From: Lama glama
Taxonomy: Eukaryota
Assembly: GCA_028534125.1 (NCBI GenBank)
Contig: CM052851.1
Coordinates: 17,422,001-17,486,000 of the forward strand
Length of the DNA stretch: 64,000 nucleotides
Reading direction: 5' to 3'
Shown: in pieces, positions 740 through 62,425 of the stretch
How the letters are laid out: each line of letters starts with the position of its first letter
Numbering within the stretch: position 1 is the stretch's first letter
Made by a program: the position numbers and the translations under genes
The notes under the pieces: generated by a model
The model's input: only the letters and a program-made list of their open reading frames with translations
Databases searched by the model: none
What the model was told of the DNA's origin: nothing

Positions 740-1990
740 ATATTTTTATTCATTATGCAGTTAACTAGTATTTCTGGAATGCATGTGGTGGCCTTGAACA
801 CAGGACTTTGGAAATATGGTTCCTGTCTTAAAGCGGTGATTCTCAGCCAGGGATGTTTAAGACCCCACCCCTCACCCTTCGGACATTTGATGATGTCTGG
901 AGACATTTTTGGTTGTCATGTCTGGTGAAGGTTGGTAGCTACTAATGTTTAGTGGCTAGAGGTCAGGGATGCTGCTTCATATCCTGCAATTCATAGGGAA
1001 GCCCACACTACGAACAATCATCTGGCCTAATGCATCAGTACCACGGAGGCTGAGAAATCCTGTCTTAAATGATCTCATGATTTCAGAGTAGAAGGCAGGC
1101 GTATTGTTAATGGAATTGAGATTCTAACAAGTAACTTGTAACAAAGATTAGTATTTCTGCCAGGGATACAAAGGGGGATGGTGTCATGTTTCCCTGTAAA
1201 AGACTGAAAGATTTGAGAAAGTGATGTTGAGCTGAGGAGGAGGAGGAGAGGGGACAAGGAGAAATCATTTCAGGAAGAGGAAATCTTTTGAGCAAAGTCA
1301 CAGAAACATGACCCTACAAATAGCTTAATTAAACTGGAGTTCAAAGTTGTGGTGTGGAATAAGTCTGGACCTGCAGTCAGAGGTTCAGTTATGAAGACTT
1401 GGTTTTGCAGGCTGAAGTGTTTGGACTTTATTCTGTAGGCAAAGGAAATCCATTGAAAAGAACTGTGGGATTAAAAAATATGAATACGTTACTTTTTTCT
1501 GATGAAAGAAAATACTTCTGGCAGCCCAAAGAAAACTGGAGGAGAACAAGAACGATTAGAGGCATGGACGTCACTTTGGCTAATTATGAAATAGTGCACG
1601 TTGAAAGTCCTGAGAAGCTGCTCTGTCTCACTAGACGCTGCATTTGGTGGTTGCCTCTGTGAAATGGTGATGCTAAGACGGCTGGCTGGATTTGCTTCTC
1701 CATCAAATGTGGGGGTTGAGATATCAAATAGGAGTTTTCAAAAATGAGTTACTTGTAACATTGGAAGTAGACTAGTTTGTTCAGTGAGAACATCAGAAGA
1801 GGAGACTGATCTCTGAAAATACCGATATTTACCTGAAGTGGAGGAAAAGACATTAGCTTTTGTAAGTTATAATAGGTAGTCAAAGATATGGTAGGGGTGA
1901 GAGAGGTGGAGTAATGACATTTAAAGGGCATAAGAGACACCTGGCCATTACTTGAAATTAAGCTGATGCTGAAGGATTTCATTTCCACTG
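740..1990 (-). mobile_element. L2 LINE relic (3' region), interrupted by MER20
   Basis: Purine-rich antisense L2 signature (tggttcctgtcttaaa...; ttggactttattctgtaggcaaaggaaatccattgaa; gttgagatatcaaatagg). Boundaries approximate. Confidence 0.7.
834..1062 (+). mobile_element. MER20 (hAT-Charlie non-autonomous DNA transposon)
   Basis: Diagnostic ggacatttg..atgtctggagacatttttggttgtca and gtcagggatgctgct motifs. Degenerate TIRs cggtgattctcagcc / ggctgagaaatcctg. 8-bp TSD tcttaaag (826-833) / tcttaaat (1063-1070). Confidence 0.9.
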
Positions 1991-2511
1991 CAAGTCAAAT
2001 TATGAAAGAAGTATTTTTTGAAACACTTAGCCTGGGCAAAAATCAAGAAAGGGACTCCTTAGTTTCCAGAGTGAAGAAAAAAATGTCAAGATCAGATCAC
2101 TAATCAGAGGCCCACATTTTCCAGCTATCAGACCTGGGAAACAGACTTTAAAGGCAGAATCCGATATTTTCATGCCCTCAGAGGAGCGCCCAGTGCAGAG
2201 GCTGCATACACAAGGAGACTGAATGCGTATTACCCACAGAAAGCTTCGAGGCAAGCAGGTATGCTACTGTGTCCTTGAAAGCAAAATTCTGACCACTATC
2301 ATTGAGTCATTTTTGAGAAACCTGCAATGGGAAACAGCTTTAAGCAAATTTGTGAGTTCCAAATTTTATTACTTAACGTGATGTAAAAACAGAGGGTAGA
2401 GAAATTAACAAAATTCTAATGTAAACTCAGAAACCACAACAACAAGGAAGCAGTGGATATGAACTGGCATTCAGTGAGTGTTGCTACAAACCAGGGCTCC
2501 TGACACACCCC

Positions 2512-2888
2512 TGTGTAAGTCAGCTGAGGCTGTCATTACGGAATACCACAGAAAGGTGGCTTAAACAACACATATGTATTTTTCCTCACAGTTCTGGAGG
2601 CTGAAATTCCGAGATCAAGGTGTTGGCACTGTTAGTTTCTGGTGAGACTTCTCTCCTTGGCTTGAAGGTGGCTGCGTTCTCACTGTGTCCTCACGTGGGA
2701 CTTCCTTCGTATGCGTGTTTCTGTTCTCTCCTCTTATGTGAATACACGTGCTGTTGGAGTAGGACCCCTGTTGTGTGACATTGTTTCACCTTAATTACCT
2801 CTTGAAAGACCCCCATCTCCAAATCCAGTCATATTGAGGGTTAGGGCTTCAACACAAGGAATTTGAGGAGACGATGCGGTTTGTAACA
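2512..2888 (-). mobile_element. MaLR solo LTR, MLT1A-type
   Basis: TG...CA ends; ggcttaaacaac, ctcacagttctggaggctg, gagatcaaggtgttggca and gggttagggcttcaaca motifs; 5-bp TSD acccc/acctc. Confidence 0.88.
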
Positions 2889-2899
2889 ACCTCCATGAA

Positions 2900-4440
2900 G
2901 ATTACCTAAGAGTGAAACATTCAAGTTGCCTGTGGGGACTCATGATTAAAGTGAATCAGAAAATTCAACAAATAGAATTTACACCCTAGAACTGGAAATA
3001 ATAGAACTATCCAGAGGAGACATGAAAATAAATTGTGTAAAAGTTTAAGTACGTAAAAGAAGAAAAATCACCACAGCCATCATACTTGAAGGAGAACGCC
3101 AAACTTGAACTGTGGGGCATAAGAGCTGTACTATTTGGAGATTGTGAGCAAATCCATTTGGCAAAGATGTAGATAAGTGTAAATAAGTGTTAGTGACTTG
3201 GAAATAGATCTGGTTAAATTAATCAGATATGCATCACAGATGTAAAGATATAAAGAAAATAAAATAACAGACTACAGAAAACGTACAAGAGAATTTTTAG
3301 AAAAGGAGGATAGGGAAAAATGAAGGCGAGAGCTCAGAATTTTCCTGGACTGAAAAGAGATATCAGTCTTCAGAATGCCTGAGTACACCATATCCTATCC
3401 TTGATGGGATAATCAGAAACAAATCTATACCGAGATGCATCACTGTGAAACTTCAGAACTTGCACAATCAGAAGAGATCTTGAAAGCAATCAAAGATGAA
3501 ATATCTATTACAATCAAAGGAATGAAAATTAGAATTACAGAAGATGTCTCACAGTCATAATGGAGATGAGAAGCCCAACTGAATGGTAACTTTACAGGGT
3601 GGGTGAAAAGTACTTGTCAACTAAAACCCTATACTTAGCCAAAACATAATTCAGGGGGGGTCTAAATTTTAAAAAAATGTTCATAAAAATACTGTGACAA
3701 TTCGTTAATTCATAGACTCCCACCAAAACCAAAAACAGAGCATGAACATTAATAAGAGGAAATTGAATCCCCTCCTCCCAGAATAAGGCTGGGATGGTTT
3801 GGAAATACTAAACTGTATGTTTATCAAGCATATAGGTGAATGCAGGCAAACTTGGACTGTAAAAAATGATTGATGCACAGATAGATGATAGATGATTCAT
3901 ATTACTAATTTCTTGGTCATTTTAGACAAAGCATTTCATAAGGCACAAACAAGACAACATAATGTGGTAAATTACAGAAAGAAGTTCAGTGTGAATATGC
4001 TCTAAAGCCTCTCCTGGTTTGAGAGGGGATTAGACGTGTTTATGATCTATAGATGCTCAAGTGTGTATGTTTAAAGTTTATTAGTGAATGCCAACAGGAA
4101 AGAGATTTAATATCCAGACAAAGGAAAAGGAAAGGCAGGAGGAATAAAGACGACTGTATCAATCTAATAGTAGGATTAAACATTTGGACGTAAAAGATAG
4201 AGACCAACCAGAGTATAATGGTTTCCTCTGGGCAGGGAAGGGAGTAAAATTGAGGAGAATTACAGACTGGGCTTCAGCGCTTTCTAATATATCTGTTCTG
4301 GAAAAATAAATTAGTCCAAATTGTTAAGCAAAATGTTAACATGTTAAATCTGCGACTAGAGGAGATGTTTTAGTTGTCACAATCAGTTTATTTCTGTCTG
4401 TTTGAAATACTTAGTTATGATATTAGCAAGTTTAAAAATG
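2900..4440 (+). mobile_element. Ancient ORF1-only L1 derivative (HAL1-like) with decayed ORF1
   Basis: Manual translation of 3418-3550 gives NKSIPRCITVKLQN, a frameshift, then EILKAIKDEISITIKGMKIRITEDVS, matching the L1 ORF1p RRM/CTD region. An L1ME-like 3' end follows about 0.5 kb after ORF1, with no ORF2 visible. Confidence 0.7.
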
Positions 4441-4444
4441 TACA

Positions 4445-4650
4445 TTGGTGCCAGATAAAGCTGCGTTCTCATCCCATTCCTCGTACATCCTGTGTACCTT
4501 GGGCAAAATTATTCAATTTCTTTAGGTTTCACTTGCTTAATTTTTAACTGTGTTCAATATTATAATATTGCCTACATTTCAGGGCTGTTTTAACAGTGTG
4601 AAGTGTGTGGCACAGTATTTGTAGAAAATATATTGTAACTAGTGGAAATA
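4445..4650 (+). mobile_element. MIR SINE
   Basis: Core ctgtgtaccttgggcaaaattattcaatttctttaggtttca and 3' tgtggcacagta. Confidence 0.7.
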
Positions 4651-4689
4651 AAACAGTTTATTTCATGCAGCGGAATGCAACCAAAGAGA

Positions 4690-5300
4690 GGAACATTTTT
4701 AAAAGACGAAAGGCAGTATCATTAGTTTCCTATGCAAGCAAAATATTCAAATTACTGATATTGACCATGGGGTTTAACTCTAATGAGGTCACTGATGAAG
4801 TTTACGTGAGCAATTTGGGGAGATCCGTGAGAGCAGCCAACTGTGGGCGTGTGTGGAAGAGGGGAAACGACAGATATAAACCTTGCAGTGTATTGTTTGA
4901 AACAAGAAGGCGACAAAAAAAAAAATCACCCACTTATTTATAGAAGCAGGAGAGAAAACAAGGAATTTTGAAAGTGGGAGGCTGCCAAAGTGAACTATTT
5001 AAAGTTTGGTTGCGGAGAAAAATAGGTCAGGGACTAGAGGCAGACAGAGGGGTGTGTGTGTGTAGTGGTAAGGATTTGGGCATGTTTACGGAGTGAGAGG
5101 AGAGGTCCAGTAGCAAGGGGGAAGGTGCAAATGTAGGAGCAAAGGTAAAGCACTGGTGGACCAAGGTCCTAGAAGAGATGGTAGGGGTGAGACTCAGGAG
5201 CACAGACGGAAGTGTGGAGAGAATCAGTTGTCTGAGGTGAGGAGAAAGCTGCACACGAGTGCTGGCGGTCCTCGTGTTTACGTGCGTGTGAAGGACAATG
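4690..5300 (-). mobile_element. L2 relic
   Basis: Purine-rich antisense L2-like sequence (gaggtcactgatgaag...; atttgggcatgtttacggagtgagagg). Confidence 0.55.
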
Positions 5301-6169
5301 CGGGGCTTATGGCTCTGAGCTTCAGATTGGTCTGTGGAAGATACGAGGCCACGTCCTCCACTGGGGAAGAATGTGTGCTTTGGTTATCGTAGTTTGTGTG
5401 CCTTTCCCCGGCCAAGAAGAAAGACTCAGGCGTTGAAATTCTCTGGAAGGGATGCTGATGGGAAAATTGGATTCAGGCCCAAGTCTCCCTCTCAAAAGAA
5501 GGGTTTTGTGTACGCGAACAATCATTGTTTGAGACTTCAGATCACCACACTCATTTCAGAAAGTCATGAGCCGTCCACAGAGGGGACCGATGGGCGAGAG
5601 TTCCTGGCTAAGCCTTTTGGGACATAAACTGCAGCCAAGACTCCACATTTCCATGTCCTCTACAAAACCAGCTTTCTCAAAACAGACTCATACAAGCTGC
5701 AGTCACAGCCGAATGCCATGTTTCTATTATTGTGATGACATAAAATCATTAAACCACTGCTAGTAGTAAAAGCAGTTGTGTCTGGCAATAGACCTGCTCT
5801 GTGCCCATTCAGAGGGAATTGCATTTTAAATGACCCCTGGAGAGCAACGACGGGAGAGGCGCGGGACCGAGGTTTGACTTCCACGGTAATTTATTACATG
5901 TCCTCCTTTGGTCTTGCTGCCGTACTCAAGCTCTTTGTTCTGAAAAGTGGGTCATACTGGCTGGAGTGCATGAGCACAAACTGTAATGAGGTTTCAAATT
6001 TTTGTTGGAGTCATATACTAATTTTTAAATAATATTTCCCAAATTTAAAGTCACAAAAAATAATTAAAAGGTCCCGATGTCAAGACTCAACTCCCGCGTC
6101 CCTAATCGCAGAAGGTTCTCATCTAGACTTCTTTTTACACCATATATATCACATAAGCAGAATTACAAC

Positions 6170-28084: not shown

Positions 28085-28510
28085 GAAGAAGGTGACTAGC
28101 CGCTCACCAAAGATTTGCATTTCCTTCCCATAGTACAGATTCTCGGTGGAAAAGGCTGCTCATACTAGAACCGTTGACTATTGTTGGCCGTGTGACTCTT
28201 TCCAATCAACAGAATTTGAGCAGAATTGATGGGTATCACAGTTTGTTTGAAATGGTCAAGAAATGTGAGGGCTTCCACCCTCTCTTTCTTTGTCTGCTGG
28301 CTTGAAGCAAAAGACTCTGAGGCCCTGGGAGATGGCAGAAATTACAAAATGAGAGTGGCTTAATGACTGATCCATGTTCCAAGTTTTATCCACCAACTGC
28401 TTTAATAAACTGTTAGGTGAACAAGAAGTAAACTTCTTATTTTGTTCAGCTGCTGTGATTCTAGGGAATCTTCTCTTATAGAAGTTAGCATTATCTTACC
28501 TCATTTAAGG
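28085..28510 (+). mobile_element. MaLR solo LTR, MLT1I/H-type
   Basis: ggccgtgtgact...cagaatttgagcagaattgatg; gaggccctgggagatggcagaa; gaacaagaagtaaacttcttattttgtt. Confidence 0.75.
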
Positions 28511-28692
28511 ACTTTGATGAAAATGTTAGGAATCTGAACCTCGGCCAAGTTAGAAATTTTAAATACATTATAAGGTGCTGGCAAAACTGGGAATAGAACT
28601 CAGAAAGACTGAAATTACCCATTGTGAGGGCCTCAAGCATAGAAAGCAACAGATTAGGAGAAATTGAAAAGAAATAAAAGAATGAAAGAAGG

Positions 28693-29036
28693 GGAGGGGG
28701 TGGGCCAAGACGGCAGAGTAGAAGGACGCCTAGCTCACCCTCTCCCACAAATACAGCTAAAACCACAGCTACATACAGAAAAAATCACACAGGATACCTA
28801 CTGAACTTCTGCAGAATATCTCTTACATTGGAAATACAAGGAAATCCTCACAAAACTGATAAACAAGTTTCTAGTGTATAGCACAGGCAACTATACTCAA
28901 TATCTTGTAGTAACCTATAATGAAAAGAATATGAAAAGAATATATTTTTGTGTATGTATGACTGAAACATTGTGCTGTACACCAGAAATTGACACAATGT
29001 TGTAAAGTGACTACGCTTCAATTAAAAAATAAAAAT
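28693..29036 (+). mobile_element. Bipartite mini-L1: L1 5' UTR start (166 bp) fused to L1 3' UTR end plus A-tail (178 bp)
   Basis: The 5' module begins ggagggggtgggccaagacggcagagtagaaggacgcctagctcacc, the L1 5' terminus with a near-match to the YY1 motif aagatggc. The 3' module is homologous to the L1 tails starting at 36911 and about 62253. 16-bp TSD aaagaatgaaagaagg (28677-28692) / aaagaaggaaagaagg (29037-29052). Confidence 0.85.
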
Positions 29037-29599
29037 AAAGAAGGAAAGAAGGATCAAAGAACTGTATCACTAATGATTTATTATCTAGAAGGAGTCCTTG
29101 ATCAAAAAGTAGATGGGATATTCTTCCCCTCTCTTCTTTCCAGAGGGAGTAACTCCTCTGTTCTTTAAGTCAGATTTGATGCAGAGGACCAGCTTGGTAA
29201 ATACCACATGTGGTCCATTGCCTCCTCTAATTCTGTGTGTACTCTTAACTTAAAGGAAGACATAAGAAAGGAAGCTTAAAGAGATTTATTGATTAAACAA
29301 ACAAACAAACTTGCTCTTTTCACACTTGTATACGACCTGCTTACTTCATTGTCCATCTAAGGTTCCCGTCCGTTCCATGTAACATAATCTCTCTTTCTGA
29401 TATTATCCAGTTATTCTGCATCTGACCTCATGGAATTATAAAATCTGTAAGCATGCATTTCTAAGTCTATGCATATCTCTAGCACCTTGCTCTTTGGTAA
29501 ATTGTATATGCTCTATTTTGGGTGGAAATATTTTTACCCAGAGAAGTTTCCTGAAGTCAAAGCCAGAAAGACAACTGCTTATCTTCTGGCTGTACCTTT

Positions 29600-36422: not shown

Positions 36423-37080
36423 GATCCAGCAATCCCACTCCTAGGTATATATCCAGAGAAATCTCTACCTTGAAAAGATACATCCACCCTGATGTTCAAA
36501 GCAGCANNNNNNNNNNNNNNNNNNNNNNNNNNNNNNNNNNNNNNNNNNNNNNNNNNNNNNNNNNNNNNNNNNNNNNNNNNNNNNNNNNNNNNNNNNNNNN
36601 NNNNNNNNNNNNNNNNNNNNNNNNNNNNNNNNNNNNNNNNNNNNNNNNNNNNNNNNNNNNNNNNNNNNNACATGGATAGACTAGAGGTTATCATTCTAGG
36701 TGAAATAAGCCAGAAAGAAAAATAAAAATACAATGTGATATCACTGAGTTGTGGAATCTAAAATAAATATGTAAATGAACTTATTTACAGACTCAAAATA
36801 GACTCACAGACATAAAGAACATACTATGGTTAATAAAGGGGAAAGGGGTGGGGGGAGGGATAAATCAGGTGTTTGGGATTAAAAGATATACACTACTATA
36901 CATAAAATAGATAAACAAGAATCTACTGTATAGCACAGGAAACTATTCAATATCTTGTTATAACCTATAATGGAAAAGAATCTGAAAATGAATATGTATA
37001 TATGTATATATTTATAATGTATCATTGAATCACTGTTATACACCTAATACAACATTGTGAATCAACTATACTTCAATTAA
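36423..37080 (+). mobile_element. Lineage-specific 5'-truncated L1 with TSD (contains N gap 36507-36669)
   Basis: gatccagcaatcccactcctaggtatatatcc through a complete 3' UTR. 15-bp TSD aaaaatgctttttgt (36408-36422) / aaaattgctttttgt (37081-37095) at a canonical TTTT|AAAA site. Confidence 0.95.
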
Positions 37081-37219
37081 AAAATTGCTTTTTGTTGGCA
37101 CAGCTGTTAACATTGTTATTTTGGCTTCTCTCAAAAACTACCTTACTTGATGCCAACAATCACCTGGTGGCAAGTTGGATTAAGTTCATTTTACTTGGTA
37201 AAATTAGTAAATCATGACA

Positions 37220-49760: not shown

Positions 49761-50309
49761 CTGACCTTTATCACCCTGAAACAACAGCTTTGTTCTCTTT
49801 TTCAACTACCTGATTTGCTTATCAGCCTTGTCTGTTATGCCATCCAGCCCAGTTCTATGGAAGCCTGCTCTTCTGTGGATATGATCAGTTTCTTCAGGAT
49901 CTGAGAGCATAACTTTAGCTCTTTCCCAATTGTCGGTTTGCTCTCTGAGGTCTGTGGTCTTGCAGATCTTATTTCTCCTGTGCATTGAATTTGATCATTT
50001 TCCTGGTGTTGTTTTTCAAAGGTCTGGGCATTCCACATTACCTCCTCATCTTTAGACTGGAAAGCAACTGCTCTCTGATGCCGCGATGACCTGATTTGCC
50101 TTTGACAGTGCGTGATGGCCTGAATGAGGGAGGGGAGAAGGAAGGAGAGCATTGGTTCTGCACGTGGAGCTCCCTTTTTATTCATTTTTCCTTCTCCTCC
50201 CACACCCGCTGCTTTATCCAGGGGCAAAGATGTCAGCTGCCCTTTCTTTGTATACATTTCGGAAAGACCTCAAAATTCCTAAGGAACCGTCCTGGTTTCT
50301 AAATGATGA

Positions 50310-51530: not shown

Positions 51531-52899
51531 GAGCAACTCACGAATGCCAGGTGTGAATATTTTTAACCTATTTGTGGAAAAAGATCATCAAAATGTTGAC
51601 AGTGGTGACAGCTCTACCAGCTCATGGTGAAATATTAAAGAGACCGAGTCATTTTTGTTTATTTCTAATGAGCAAAATATTTATCCCAGATCCAAGTATA
51701 CTGGCAAGGAAATGAGTGACACATTGCAATTAAGGTGATAGTACTGCCATTTGCAGTCAGTTTCAGGGGTCATGTTGGGTTATCATGTCCTCCCTCACCT
51801 TAAAAATGGCAGACCTTCCGTCATACGATTGCAGCGATGCTGGGGCAGACATGCATGTGCTCTGTTCCTTCTATTCTGTGATCTCTTCTAACAAGTCTGT
51901 TTATTTTTGCTTTGCGTAGATGGATCCGTGGGTTTTACAAAGAGTTGATTCAGATCATTAAANNNNNNNNNNNNNNNNNNNNNNNNNNNNNNNNNNNNNN
52001 NNNNNNNNNNNNNNNNNNNNNNNNNNNNNNNNNNNNNNNNNNNNNNNNNNNNNNNNNNNNNNNNNNNNNNNNNNNNNNNNNNNNNNNNNNNNNNAGATTT
52101 ATGGTGGCTCTTGCCTGAAATAAATGCATGCAAGGAGGAATAATTTATCGGGTGAGAAAGATCAGACTTTAATTTGCAAAGCCATAAAAAGCTTAAGTGG
52201 TTTTCACAACGTAGGAAGAAAGAGAGAGACAAAGAGAGAGAGATATTAGTTATATTCTATATATAATGTCCATAAGCAATTCCTAATATAAGAATAGCAA
52301 GAATAGGGAAAGGGGAGAGAGCGTTTCTGCAGAGGTCTGCTTTAGCTGCATGAGGAATGGCTATGTCCCGTGGTACACTGCTCCAAAAGCTCTAAGCTGA
52401 TAAGAACCCATCATTTGAGGATGGAGAGCAAGGAACTGCTTTTTAGGATTGCCATGGAGGGAGGCAGGGCAACATAAGCAACCCCAATATTTGAGTCAGG
52501 CAACCCCATCATTCTTCATCCTCCTCCTTTAATGCCACCACAAGTGAACTAAGTTAAAAAACAATATGCTTAGTAGGCAATGAAGTGTCAAGATAAACGC
52601 CATCCCAATAAACATATAACATGTGTAAAATAGGTTCTTGATAAAGGAACTTCAGGTGGAATCTCCTGGCTTCCTTTCCAGGAAATCTGCTACTCCTAGG
52701 TTCAGGGTGAATAGAACTTCCGGGGCTACAACTGCCTGTGAAGTATACTTGAAGGTACATCCTGTGAAGGTATTGGTAGGAATCAAGCAAAGAATTCCCT
52801 CAAGCTGTGGTTGGCAGGAGTGGAAAGTCCCTAGGGTTTGCACTGCCCTAGAATCCAAGCTCAGGAAGAAGACAATGTTAGTTTATTTGCAACACGGAG

Positions 52900-61075: not shown

Positions 61076-62425
61076 AAGACTGTCTCGTTGGCAAGTGGTG
61101 TTGGGAAGGCAGGACAGCCTCATGTAAATCAATGAAATTAGAACACTCCCTCACACTATACACAAAAATAAACTCAAAATGGCTTAAAGACTTAAATATG
61201 AGACAGGACACCATAAAACTCCTAGAAGAGAACATGGGCAAAACATTCTGTGACATAAATCGTAGCAATGTTCTCCTAGGCGGTTTACCCAGGCAATAGA
61301 AATAAAAGCAAAAATAAACCAATGAAAACTAATCAAACTTTAAGCTTTTGCACAGCAAAGGAAACCAAAAACAAAACAAAAAGACAGCCTACAGAATGGG
61401 AGAAAATATTTGCCAATGATGTAACTGACAAGACCTTCATTTCCAAAATATACAAGCAACTCATACAACNNNNNNNNNNNNNNNNNNNNNNNNNNNNNNN
61501 NNNNNNNNNNNNNNNNNNNNNNNNNNNNNNNNNNNNNNNNNNNNNNNNNNNNNNNNNNNNNNNNNNNNNNNNNNNNNNNNNNNNNNNNNNNNNNNNNNNN
61601 NNNNNNNNNNNNNNNNNNNNNNNNNNNNNNNNNNNNNNNNNNNNNNNNNNNNNNNNNNNNNNNNNNNNNNNNNNNNNNNNTAGAGAGGGTGTGGAGAAAA
61701 GAGAACTCTCCAACACCGTTGGTGGAAATGTAATTTGGTGCAGCCACTGTGGAAAACAGTATGGAGGTTCCTTAAAAACTAAAAATTGACTTACCATATG
61801 ATCCAACAATCCCACTCCTGGGCACATATCCAGACAAAACTCCAATTTGAAAAGATGCATGCACCCCAGTGNNNNNNNNNNNNNNNNNNNNNNNNNNNNN
61901 NNNNNNNNNNNNNNNNNNNNNNNNNNNNNNNNNNNNNNNNNNNNNNNNNNNNNNNNNNNNNNNNNNNNNNNNNNNNNNNNNNNNNNNNNNNNNNNNNNNN
62001 NNNNNNNNNNNNNNNNNNNNNNNNNNNNNACCTAGACATTATCATACTAAGTGAAATAAGTCAGAGAAAGACAAATGTCATATGATATCAGTGATATGTG
62101 TAATGTAAAGAATGATACAAATGAACTTATTTCCAAAACAGAAACAGAATCACAGACATAGAAATCAAATTTAAGGGTGCTAAAATGGAAAGGGTGGTAG
62201 AGATAAATTAGAAGTTTGGATTAGAAGTTTCAAACTACTATATATGAAATAGATAAACAATAAGGTCCTACTGTATAGCACAGGGAACTATATTAAATAT
62301 CTTGTAATAACCTAAATGAAAAAGATATGAAAAATAAAATATATATGTATAACTGAATCACTTTGCTATACATCAGAAACTAACACAACATTGTAAATTA
62401 TAGTTTAATTAAAAAGTAAATAAAT
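61076..62425 (+). mobile_element. Lineage-specific 5'-truncated L1 (ORF2 C-terminus plus 3' UTR; N gaps 61470-61680 and 61872-62029), adjacent to an older L1 relic
   Basis: Translates as [50 protein letters not shown]...[13 protein letters not shown]...[11 protein letters not shown], with frameshifts, followed by a cetartiodactyl-type 3' UTR. Confidence 0.95.

What the first reader, a model, noticed from the sequence alone, without database searches (positions are those of the whole stretch)
28677..29052. 344-bp TSD-flanked mini-L1 made only of the L1 5' terminus and 3' terminus: candidate spliced or bipartite non-autonomous retroelement
Seen in the sequence: a 166-bp module (28693-28858) begins like an L1 5' UTR (G-rich start, ccaagacggcagagtagaaggacg). 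It is joined at caaaactg|ataaacaag to a 178-bp L1 3' UTR end with an A-rich tail. The whole unit lies between 16-bp direct repeats with one mismatch, so it occupies a single insertion site. In both other young L1 copies in this window the homologous point follows an AG (cataaaatag|ataaacaag at 36910/36911; tgaaatag|ataaacaat near 62252). Established: L1 has an internal Pol II promoter with a YY1 site at its 5' end; spliced L1 RNAs can retrotranspose (SpIREs in primates); bipartite 5'+3' non-autonomous LINEs are known mainly for RTE/Vingi-type LINEs. Inference: almost the whole L1, including both ORFs, was removed, possibly as one GT-AG intron. From memory, cetartiodactyl L1 5' UTRs continue with g|gtagg near this position, but I have not verified that. 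The product keeps the promoter start and poly(A) end and could be mobilised in trans as a SINE-sized Pol II family. Caveat: the putative acceptor has a poor pyrimidine tract.
Basis: partly seen in the sequence, partly recalled or inferred. Interest (0 to 1): 0.8.

Follow-up and report, generated by a model that had tools for sequence, protein, structure and literature searches.

The report
ORF-less mini-L1 retrocopy, multi-copy junction
This is a real 344-bp retrocopy made only of the first about 166 bases and the last about 178 bases of an L1 retrotransposon. The same junction recurs at other places in the genome, so it is either a repeatedly retrotransposed processed L1 RNA or a small L1-derived parasite of L1.

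Summary

**Structure.** Positions 28693-29036 are a 5' module joined at 28858|28859 to an L1 3' end. The unit has an A-rich tail, a 15/16 target-site duplication (shuffle p about 1.5e-4) and an AT|AAAA target.

**Two modules.** Contigs of three organism labels show two very different repeat classes:
- 5' module: summed depth 1,600-5,800, against about 10 for single-copy flank.
- 3' module: 10^4 to 10^6.
- The step lies exactly at the junction.

**Other copies.**
- Two paralogous loci bridge the same junction with at least 31 nt on each side.
- About three more reach 4-8 nt past it.
- The scan's first readers noted four similar mini-L1s on other DNA of this genome (unverified).

**Age.** This copy is old, about 15-17% different from its paralogs. 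It is present in all three organisms laid.

**Splicing.**
- The acceptor AG is seen in both L1 3' ends of the window.
- The donor GT could not be read, because no full-length L1 of this genome could be fetched.
- Ruminant L1-type 5' ends are significantly similar only over the first 41 nt. Their only GTR motif within about 35 nt on either side lies 152-153 nt in, against 154 nt here. This is a positional clue only.

A self-propagating family is not shown.

Verdict: a new variant of a known kind (SpIRE-like, or a bipartite non-autonomous LINE). Interest is moderate.

The parts
28677..28692 (.). Left target-site duplication, aaagaatgaaagaagg. It is preceded by aaat, so the target reads AT|AAAA, close to the L1 endonuclease TT|AAAA.
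   Evidence: 15/16 match to 29037-29052; shuffle p 1.5e-4.
28693..28704 (+). G-rich leader (ggagggggtggg) at the extreme 5' end of the element.
   Evidence: Paralogous contigs start aligning at 28693-28705 while the contigs continue into other flanks (records 2, 10, 11, 18, 19). The leader is therefore part of the repeat's 5' end.
28705..28746 (+). L1 5'-terminus homology, with a YY1-box-like ccaagacggcag.
   Evidence: 83-96% identity to the 5' termini of six ruminant L1-type repeats. The resemblance to the human L1 start and YY1 box is from established knowledge.
28747..28858 (+). Rest of the 5' module, presumed to be lineage-specific L1 5' UTR. It is repeated roughly 160-580 times.
   Evidence: summed contig depth 1,587-5,794 against about 10 for the flank, and about 60 contigs per run. 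Similarity to ruminant 5' UTRs is no better than shuffles.
28858..28859 (+). Junction caaaactg|ataaacaag. Most paralogs read A at 28857 (..caaaacAG|ataaac).
   Evidence: depth step at the junction; records 8/16/24 and 23 bridge it; 28857 T>A accounts for 1,131 of 1,492 depth.
28859..29023 (+). Terminal part of the L1 3' UTR, including the AATTAAA and AATAAA signals.
   Evidence: 76.5% and 74.1% identity to two L1 3' ends in the window. (summed depth 10^4 to 10^6).
29024..29036 (+). Short, degenerate A-rich tail (aaaaaataaaaat).
29037..29052 (.). Right target-site duplication, aaagaaggaaagaagg.
36901..37085 (+). Comparison L1 3' end. AG at 36909-36910 lies immediately before the point homologous to 28859.
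62250..62420 (+). Comparison L1 3' end. TAG at 62250-62252 lies immediately before the homologous point.

Best explanation
The element is an old, fixed retrocopy of a processed L1 RNA. That RNA kept only the first about 166 nt (5' terminus with YY1-like box) and the last about 178 nt (3' UTR end with poly(A) signal) of L1, and lost both ORFs.

Insertion (shown): it was inserted by the L1 endonuclease and reverse transcriptase. The evidence is the 16-bp TSD, the AT|AAAA target and the A tail. Because it encodes nothing, the proteins must have been supplied in trans (inferred).

Other copies (shown): the same junction occurs at several other loci, so this is one member of a multi-copy set.

Origin of the deletion (inferred): the interior was most likely removed at the RNA level, by splicing from a 5' UTR donor to a weak cryptic acceptor (TAG|) about 180 nt from the poly(A) site.

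Copy number (inferred): the set could arise from repeated retrotransposition of that isoform. A 344-nt template is almost always copied to its 5' end, whereas most L1 copies are 5'-truncated. A rare trans event could therefore leave as many 5' ends as full-length L1 does.
For: Structure and TPRT hallmarks.

Two modules of very different copy number with a sharp step at 28858/28859: (depth 1,492 at 28857 against 24,216 at 28871).

Other loci with the same junction:
- Records 8/16/24 cover 28785-28937 and occur in all three organisms.
- Record 23 covers 28733-28926.
- Records 2/10/19, 7, 11 and 18 reach 28862-28866.

Evidence that the 5' module also exists unjoined: other contigs carry it and stop matching at 28853-28858 while the contig continues (records 12, 15/21, 22, and RNA record 26).

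Acceptor: AG precedes the homologous point in both L1 3' ends of the window.

Donor, positional clue only: in ruminant L1-type 5' ends the only GTR motif within about 35 nt on either side (GTAGGA) lies 152-153 nt after CCAAG. The module here is 154 nt.

The locus is real and old:
- The left flank-element joint is in contigs of three organism labels with 0-1 differences (records 1, 9, 17).
- 14 runs from 8 studies hold at least 81% of the locus's sampled words.

Precedents: L1 RNA is extensively spliced (PMC2896524), and spliced L1 RNAs retrotranspose (PMC5860796).

Four other first-stage notes describe the same architecture in this genome (unverified leads).
Against: - The donor GT was not read in any L1 of this genome.
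- Beyond the first 41 nt, the 5' module is not significantly similar to the available ruminant 5' UTRs. That 28747-28858 is L1 5' UTR therefore rests on the class of contigs that continue differently, whose letters I could not see.
- The acceptor has a poor pyrimidine tract: about 42-50% pyrimidines in the 18-19 nt upstream, by my count.
- The 10 nt left of the junction (cacaaaacAG in most copies) match the L1 3' UTR (cataaaatag) at 8 of 10 positions. This also fits a deletion or template switch between short direct repeats.
- L1 cis-preference makes trans-mobilisation of ORF-less RNA inefficient (established knowledge).
Confidence: 0.6

Rival explanations
1. It is a self-propagating non-autonomous family. 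One founder, made by splicing or deletion, kept enough of the L1 promoter and the poly(A) end to be transcribed by Pol II from its own copies. It then amplified as a bipartite L1 parasite, comparable to RIME, NARTc, Vingi-N, RTE-N or Bov-A in other LINE clades.
For: - The identical junction occurs at several loci, although the acceptor is weak.
- Five first-stage notes in about 33.6 Mb scanned extrapolate to a few hundred copies. That is the same order as all copies of the 5' module (about 160-580).
- All visible paralogs are similarly diverged (15-17%), which looks like a burst.
- The first 55 nt, which include the YY1-like box, have no listed base substitution among copies. Only indels at 28729-28735 are listed (tables 3 and 4; 36 rows are hidden).
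Against: - There is no evidence of diagnostic changes shared by the mini copies, or of subfamily structure.
- Human SpIREs that keep only the first 97 nt of the 5' UTR have reduced promoter activity and are dead ends (PMC5860796).
- The copy-number extrapolation rests on unverified notes.
- The copy number is also explained by complete copying of a short template.
- Bipartite ORF-less derivatives have been reported only for RTE, Ingi, Vingi and R2 (PMC5786205).
Confidence: 0.3
2. The deletion was not made by splicing. Either the reverse transcriptase switched template during TPRT, or a slippage deletion occurred between the short direct repeats ca(c/t)aaa(a/c)(a/t)ag in the 5' UTR and 3' UTR. 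Either this happened once in a founder or it recurs.
For: - The 10 nt left of the junction match the L1 3' UTR at 8 of 10 positions (majority A at 28857).
- Other 5'/3' chimeric joints with different breakpoints exist (28761>28883 and 28748>28975, table 5).
Against: - A template switch would leave the 3' UTR version of the repeat in the product, or would need homology on the already-copied (right) side. Neither is seen.
- Two of the eight matches are the AG expected at both an exon end and an intron end.
- The sequence is A-rich, so the match may be chance.
- The breakpoint coincides positionally with the GTAGGA motif of related L1s.
Confidence: 0.2
3. It is a local event only: post-insertion deletion of a full-length L1 at this locus, or an assembly collapse.
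For: L1 inserts commonly decay by internal deletions (PMC5872511). No laid contig spans the whole element.
Against: - The same junction occurs at other loci.
- At least 81% of the locus's words are in 14 independent runs of four organism labels.
- The TSDs abut a complete 5' end and a tail.
Confidence: 0.04

Closest known systems
SpIREs (spliced integrated retrotransposed elements) of human L1 (PMC5860796)
   Same: - It is an L1 retrocopy with TPRT hallmarks whose internal deletion recurs with the same junction at many loci.
- The deletion starts in the 5' UTR, about 100-170 nt from the 5' end.
- It arose from processed L1 RNA.
   Different: - Described SpIREs splice within the 5' UTR or into ORF1, and keep ORF2 (and usually ORF1). 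They can therefore insert in cis.
- Here both ORFs are gone and the acceptor lies in the 3' UTR, so insertion must be in trans.
- The donor GT is not verified here.
Bipartite ORF-less non-autonomous LINEs: RIME/Ingi, NARTc/L1Tc, Vingi-1_EE derivatives, RTE-N, Bov-A (PMC5786205)
   Same: It has only the 5' and 3' terminal parts of the autonomous LINE, is SINE-sized, is multi-copy, and depends on the parent's proteins.
   Different: - The parent here is L1, a clade for which such derivatives were not reported as of 2018 (PMC5786205).
- Self-amplification is not shown here.
HAL1 (half-L1) elements
   Same: It is an L1-derived non-autonomous element made by loss of internal sequence.
   Different: HAL1 keeps ORF1. 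This element has no ORF (frames; 344 bp in total).
Processed pseudogenes (trans-mobilised spliced Pol II mRNAs)
   Same: It is a spliced, polyadenylated Pol II RNA copied by L1 in trans, with a TSD and an A tail, and it is usually dead on arrival.
   Different: The source RNA is L1 itself, and the copy keeps the L1 promoter start and 3' end.

Membership tests
SpIRE | Collinear, same-strand L1 sequence on both sides of one internal deletion | tested here: met
   Caveat: only the first 41 nt of the 5' module are significantly L1-like in the sequences I could fetch.
SpIRE | Deletion bounded by GT...AG in the unspliced progenitor | tested here: inconclusive
   AG is seen in two L1 3' ends of the window. 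GT could not be read in this genome. The only support is the positional match to GTAGGA in ruminant 5' ends, without significant alignment.
SpIRE | TPRT hallmarks (TSD, A tail, endonuclease-type target) | tested here: met
SpIRE | Same junction at independent loci | tested here: met
   records 8/16/24 and 23 bridge the junction with at least 31 nt on each side. Records 2/10/19, 7, 11 and 18 are probable further loci.
SpIRE | Splice within the 5' UTR or into ORF1, with coding capacity largely kept | tested here: not met
   The element is 344 bp, and the acceptor lies about 180 nt from the 3' end.
Bipartite non-autonomous LINE | Consists only of the extreme 5' and 3' parts of an autonomous LINE | tested here: met
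Bipartite non-autonomous LINE | Many copies with different flanks and TSDs sharing the junction | tested here: inconclusive
   Several contigs with different flanks are seen, but their TSDs and the total count could not be read. Four further first-stage notes are unverified.
Bipartite non-autonomous LINE | Own amplification: copies form a lineage with shared diagnostic changes and transcription from their own 5' end | not testable with these tools
   Sequences of the paralogs could not be retrieved.
HAL1 | Retains ORF1 | tested here: not met
   No ORF1 is present. The whole unit is UTR-derived.

The most novel reading that the evidence does not exclude
The mini-L1 is the founder type of a true L1-clade bipartite non-autonomous retrotransposon. 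It would be a SINE-sized, Pol II-transcribed, ORF-less parasite of L1 that amplified to a few hundred copies in this lineage. Such derivatives have so far been reported only for RTE, Ingi, Vingi and R2, so this would show that L1 cis-preference can be bypassed by an RNA carrying only L1's two termini.
Probability: 0.3. Interest if true: 0.75.

Novelty: new variant of a known kind. Interest (0 to 1): 0.55.

Why it matters
L1 is thought to protect itself from parasites by cis-preference. Its known hitch-hikers (Alu, B1, SVA, processed pseudogenes) do not carry L1's own termini.

A recurrent ORF-less 5'+3' L1 unit would show one of two things:
- A 5' UTR-to-3' UTR splice isoform of L1 is made and trans-mobilised often enough to leave hundreds of copies.
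- Or L1 can spawn bipartite non-autonomous derivatives, as RTE and Vingi do.

Either result bears on how strict cis-preference is and on what the L1 termini contribute to RNP recruitment. It also bears on how L1 5' ends should be counted: these units would be miscounted as full-length L1 5' UTRs.

Tried and rejected
**Full-length L1 in the window.** None was found. The 5' module is unique there. ORFs near both L1 3' ends give no Pfam hit, and motif scans show only short ORF2 C-terminal remnants. The ORF2-like parts are N-masked and were left unfilled.

**Pattern scans.**
- The metagenome-contig scan with the 5' start returned only ruminant contigs with Bov-type SINEs beside them. They are useful for the first 41 nt only.
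- My first MAFFT alignment suggested collinearity up to a GTAGGA. A shuffle test showed that similarity beyond nt 41 is not significant, so I do not use that alignment as evidence. Only the distance is used.
- The genome contigs and viral-contig scans with two lineage-specific patterns were blank.

**Protein-word searches.**
- The ORF through the 5' module found nothing.
- The ORF through the junction found two generic L1 3'-end ORFs from ENA.

**Other look-ups.**
- The search of earlier findings by sequence, and by further words, was blank.
- The Camelus TE paper (PMC8605555) does not describe such an element.
- The L1-chimera paper (bioRxiv 10.1101/2025.02.02.635956) does not cover it.

**Limits kept.** The progenitor was not reconstructed.

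Full report
**1. Observation**

The element runs from 28693 to 29036. It is flanked by aaagaatgaaagaagg (28677-28692) and aaagaaggaaagaagg (29037-29052), a 15/16 direct repeat that abuts both ends. Only 3 of 20,000 shuffles of the two flanks gave a repeat as long in the same geometry. Among 8,847 pairs of window positions with the same spacing, 3 had a repeat of 12 nt or more.

The target reads ..aaat|aaaag.., close to the TT|AAAA preference of the L1 endonuclease (established knowledge). The 3' end carries AATTAAA and AATAAA signals and a short degenerate A tail. This is a single TPRT-type insertion.

**2. The two modules**

*3' module.* BLAST of the unit against the window aligns 28858/59-29036 to two L1 3' ends: 62252-62420 at 76.5% identity and 36901-37085 at 74.1%. 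In both, AG directly precedes the point homologous to 28859. These two copies are short, diverged, partly N-masked fragments. Calling them young is not supported.

*5' module.* It has no second copy in the window. A scan of JGI metagenome contigs with its first 22 nt returned six contigs of a ruminant host, identified by Bov-type SINEs beside them. In each contig a repeat begins, after unrelated flank, with CCAAGATGGCAGAGTAGAAGGA. Positions 28705-28746 are 83-96% identical to these termini. Together with the well-known L1 start and YY1 box (established knowledge), this supports an L1 5' terminus.

Beyond nt 41 the similarity to these ruminant sequences is no better than shuffled controls. The identity of 28747-28858 as L1 5' UTR is therefore inferred, not shown by homology.

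**3. Genome-wide picture**

I laid Logan contigs of three DNA runs (organism labels A, C, D) and one RNA-seq run on 28500-29230 at 80% likeness.

- **Flank depth.** The left flank has a single contig per run (depth 7.5-9.8). That contig runs from the flank into the element (28500-28741) with 0-1 differences in all three organisms. The insertion is therefore shared and fixed among them.
- **Module depth.** The 5' module has summed depth of about 1,600-5,800 from about 60 contigs per run, roughly 160-580 copy equivalents. The 3' module has 10^4 to 2x10^6.
- **Step at the junction.** Depth is 1,492 at 28857 and 24,216 at 28871. Ordinary L1 3' ends therefore do not align left of the junction, and the two-module structure is real.
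- **5' boundary.** Paralogous contigs begin to match at 28693-28705 while the contigs run on into other flanks. The 5' boundary is thus the same elsewhere.
- **Locus support.** 14 runs from 8 studies and four organism labels hold at least 81% of the sampled words of 28300-29450. This argues against an assembly artefact at this locus.

**4. Is the junction single-copy? No.**

- Records 8/16/24 cover 28785-28937. They are the same short contig in all three organisms, with 23-24 differences.
- Record 23 covers 28733-28926.
- Both bridge 28858/59 with more than 31 nt on each side.
- Records 2/10/19, 7, 11 and 18 match from the 5' end through 28862-28866, that is 4-8 nt of ataaacaa. They then stop in a stretch where this copy differs from most L1 3' ends (28871, 28873, 28874, 28888). 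They are probable further members.
- A second class of contigs stops matching at 28853-28858 although the contig continues: records 12, 15/21 and 22, and RNA record 26, which ends exactly at 28858. This is what unspliced elements carrying the 5' module would give, but I could not see their letters.
- Most copies read A at 28857 (..caaaacAG|ataaac).
- This copy differs from its paralogs by 15-17%, and from the majority letter at 28758, 28768, 28781, 28784, 28793, 28809 and 28810. It is old.
- The scan's first readers independently noted four more 5'+3' mini-L1s on other DNA of this genome, in about 525 windows. These are unverified leads. Extrapolated, they suggest a few hundred copies, the same order as all 5' modules.

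**5. Splice or not**

*Acceptor.* AG is present in both unspliced 3' ends. The tract upstream is only about 42-50% pyrimidine (my count), so it is a weak site.

*Donor.* I could not obtain any full-length L1 of this genome:
- The window has none.
- Two protein-word searches found nothing useful.
- Four further collection scans were blank.
- The read laying loose-end table was filled by the much deeper 3' module.

The remaining clue is positional. In three of the six ruminant 5' ends, the only GTR motif within about 35 nt on either side, GTAGGA, lies 152-153 nt after CCAAG. A fourth has the mutated form GCAGAA at 151. The module here is 154 nt. If the local L1 reads ..caaaacag|gtagg.., the deletion is a GT-AG intron. 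That is a sharp prediction, not a result.

*Against a simple splice story.* The 10 nt left of the junction resemble the L1 3' UTR at 8 of 10 positions (cacaaaacag against cataaaatag). This would also fit slippage or a template switch between short repeats. However, two of those matches are the AG expected on both sides of a splice, the context is A-rich, and a template switch would leave the 3' UTR version in the product.

**6. Mechanism**

*Shown:*
- It is an ORF-less unit made of L1 termini.
- It was inserted by TPRT.
- It is one of several loci with the same junction.
- It is old and shared by three organism labels.

*Inferred:*
- The interior was removed from L1 RNA, most likely by splicing (about 0.55).
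- The RNA was copied in trans by L1 proteins made in the same cells.

*Copy number.* A short template is copied to its 5' end nearly every time, whereas L1 is usually 5'-truncated. Here L1 3' ends outnumber 5' modules by 100-fold or more. A trans event at well under 1% of L1's rate could therefore leave as many 5' ends as L1 itself. A self-propagating master copy is not required to explain the numbers.

*Promoter.* Human SpIREs that retain only the first 97 nt of the 5' UTR have reduced promoter activity and are dead ends (PMC5860796). This lowers, but does not exclude, the self-transcribing family reading (about 0.3).

**7. Comparison and novelty**

The unit works like a SpIRE or a processed pseudogene of L1 itself. 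It fails one SpIRE feature: SpIREs keep coding capacity, with splices within the 5' UTR or into ORF1.

Architecturally it is a bipartite ORF-less non-autonomous LINE. Kojima (PMC5786205) states that such derivatives were reported only for RTE, Ingi, Vingi and R2, so an L1 example would be new for the clade. Amplification of its own is untested here.

I found no description of such an element in the Camelus TE survey (PMC8605555). Repbase and Dfam could not be consulted, so an existing entry cannot be excluded.

I rate it a new variant of a known kind, with interest 0.55.

**8. Limits**

- Organism names are coded, so the camelid attribution is unverified.
- Contig depths are not copy numbers.
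- The right flank (29075-29230) had no contigs in any run. The tool says this can be a filter effect and proves nothing.
- N stretches were not filled.

Noticed in passing
window 28731-28857 (read laying): One very deep unitig (depth about 610-700, against about 10 for single copy) carries the 5' module with its own variants (28797A, 28800C, 28818T, 28845G) and ends at about 28857. This suggests about 60 near-identical young copies whose assembly graph branches at, or 1 nt before, the junction.
   Followed up: no
window 28700-28850, RNA run X16: In the RNA-seq contigs the first about 75 nt of the 5' module are roughly 10-fold over-represented relative to the rest of the module, unlike in the DNA runs. 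This could mean short promoter-proximal L1 RNAs or another splice donor near 28775.
   Followed up: no
window 28748-28975 (table 5): Other 5'/3' chimeric contigs have different breakpoints (28761>28883 in organisms A and C; 28748>28975 in C and D). These are further deletion derivatives or independent events.
   Followed up: no
window 49835-50257 (-): A 140-aa ORF has a weak Pfam Bcl-2_BAD match (E 4.9e-4, 21 bits, below the 28.2 cut-off). It may be a BAD coding exon.
   Followed up: no
window 36507-36669, 51963-52094, 61470-61680, 61872-62029: Four N runs are present, three of them inside the ORF2 C-terminal parts of the two L1 3' fragments. They create spurious long ORFs (for example 61322-61789 and 61333-61860).
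   Followed up: partly
L002:1980-2019, L005:346-385, L006:2031-2070: Three ruminant metagenome contigs share the same 40 nt upstream of the L1-type 5' terminus. There, the 5' end is part of a larger repeated unit.
   Followed up: no
window 29075-29230: No contig of any of the four runs was laid on the right flank, although the left flank is covered. The tool warns that a filter for human-like records can cause this.
   Followed up: no
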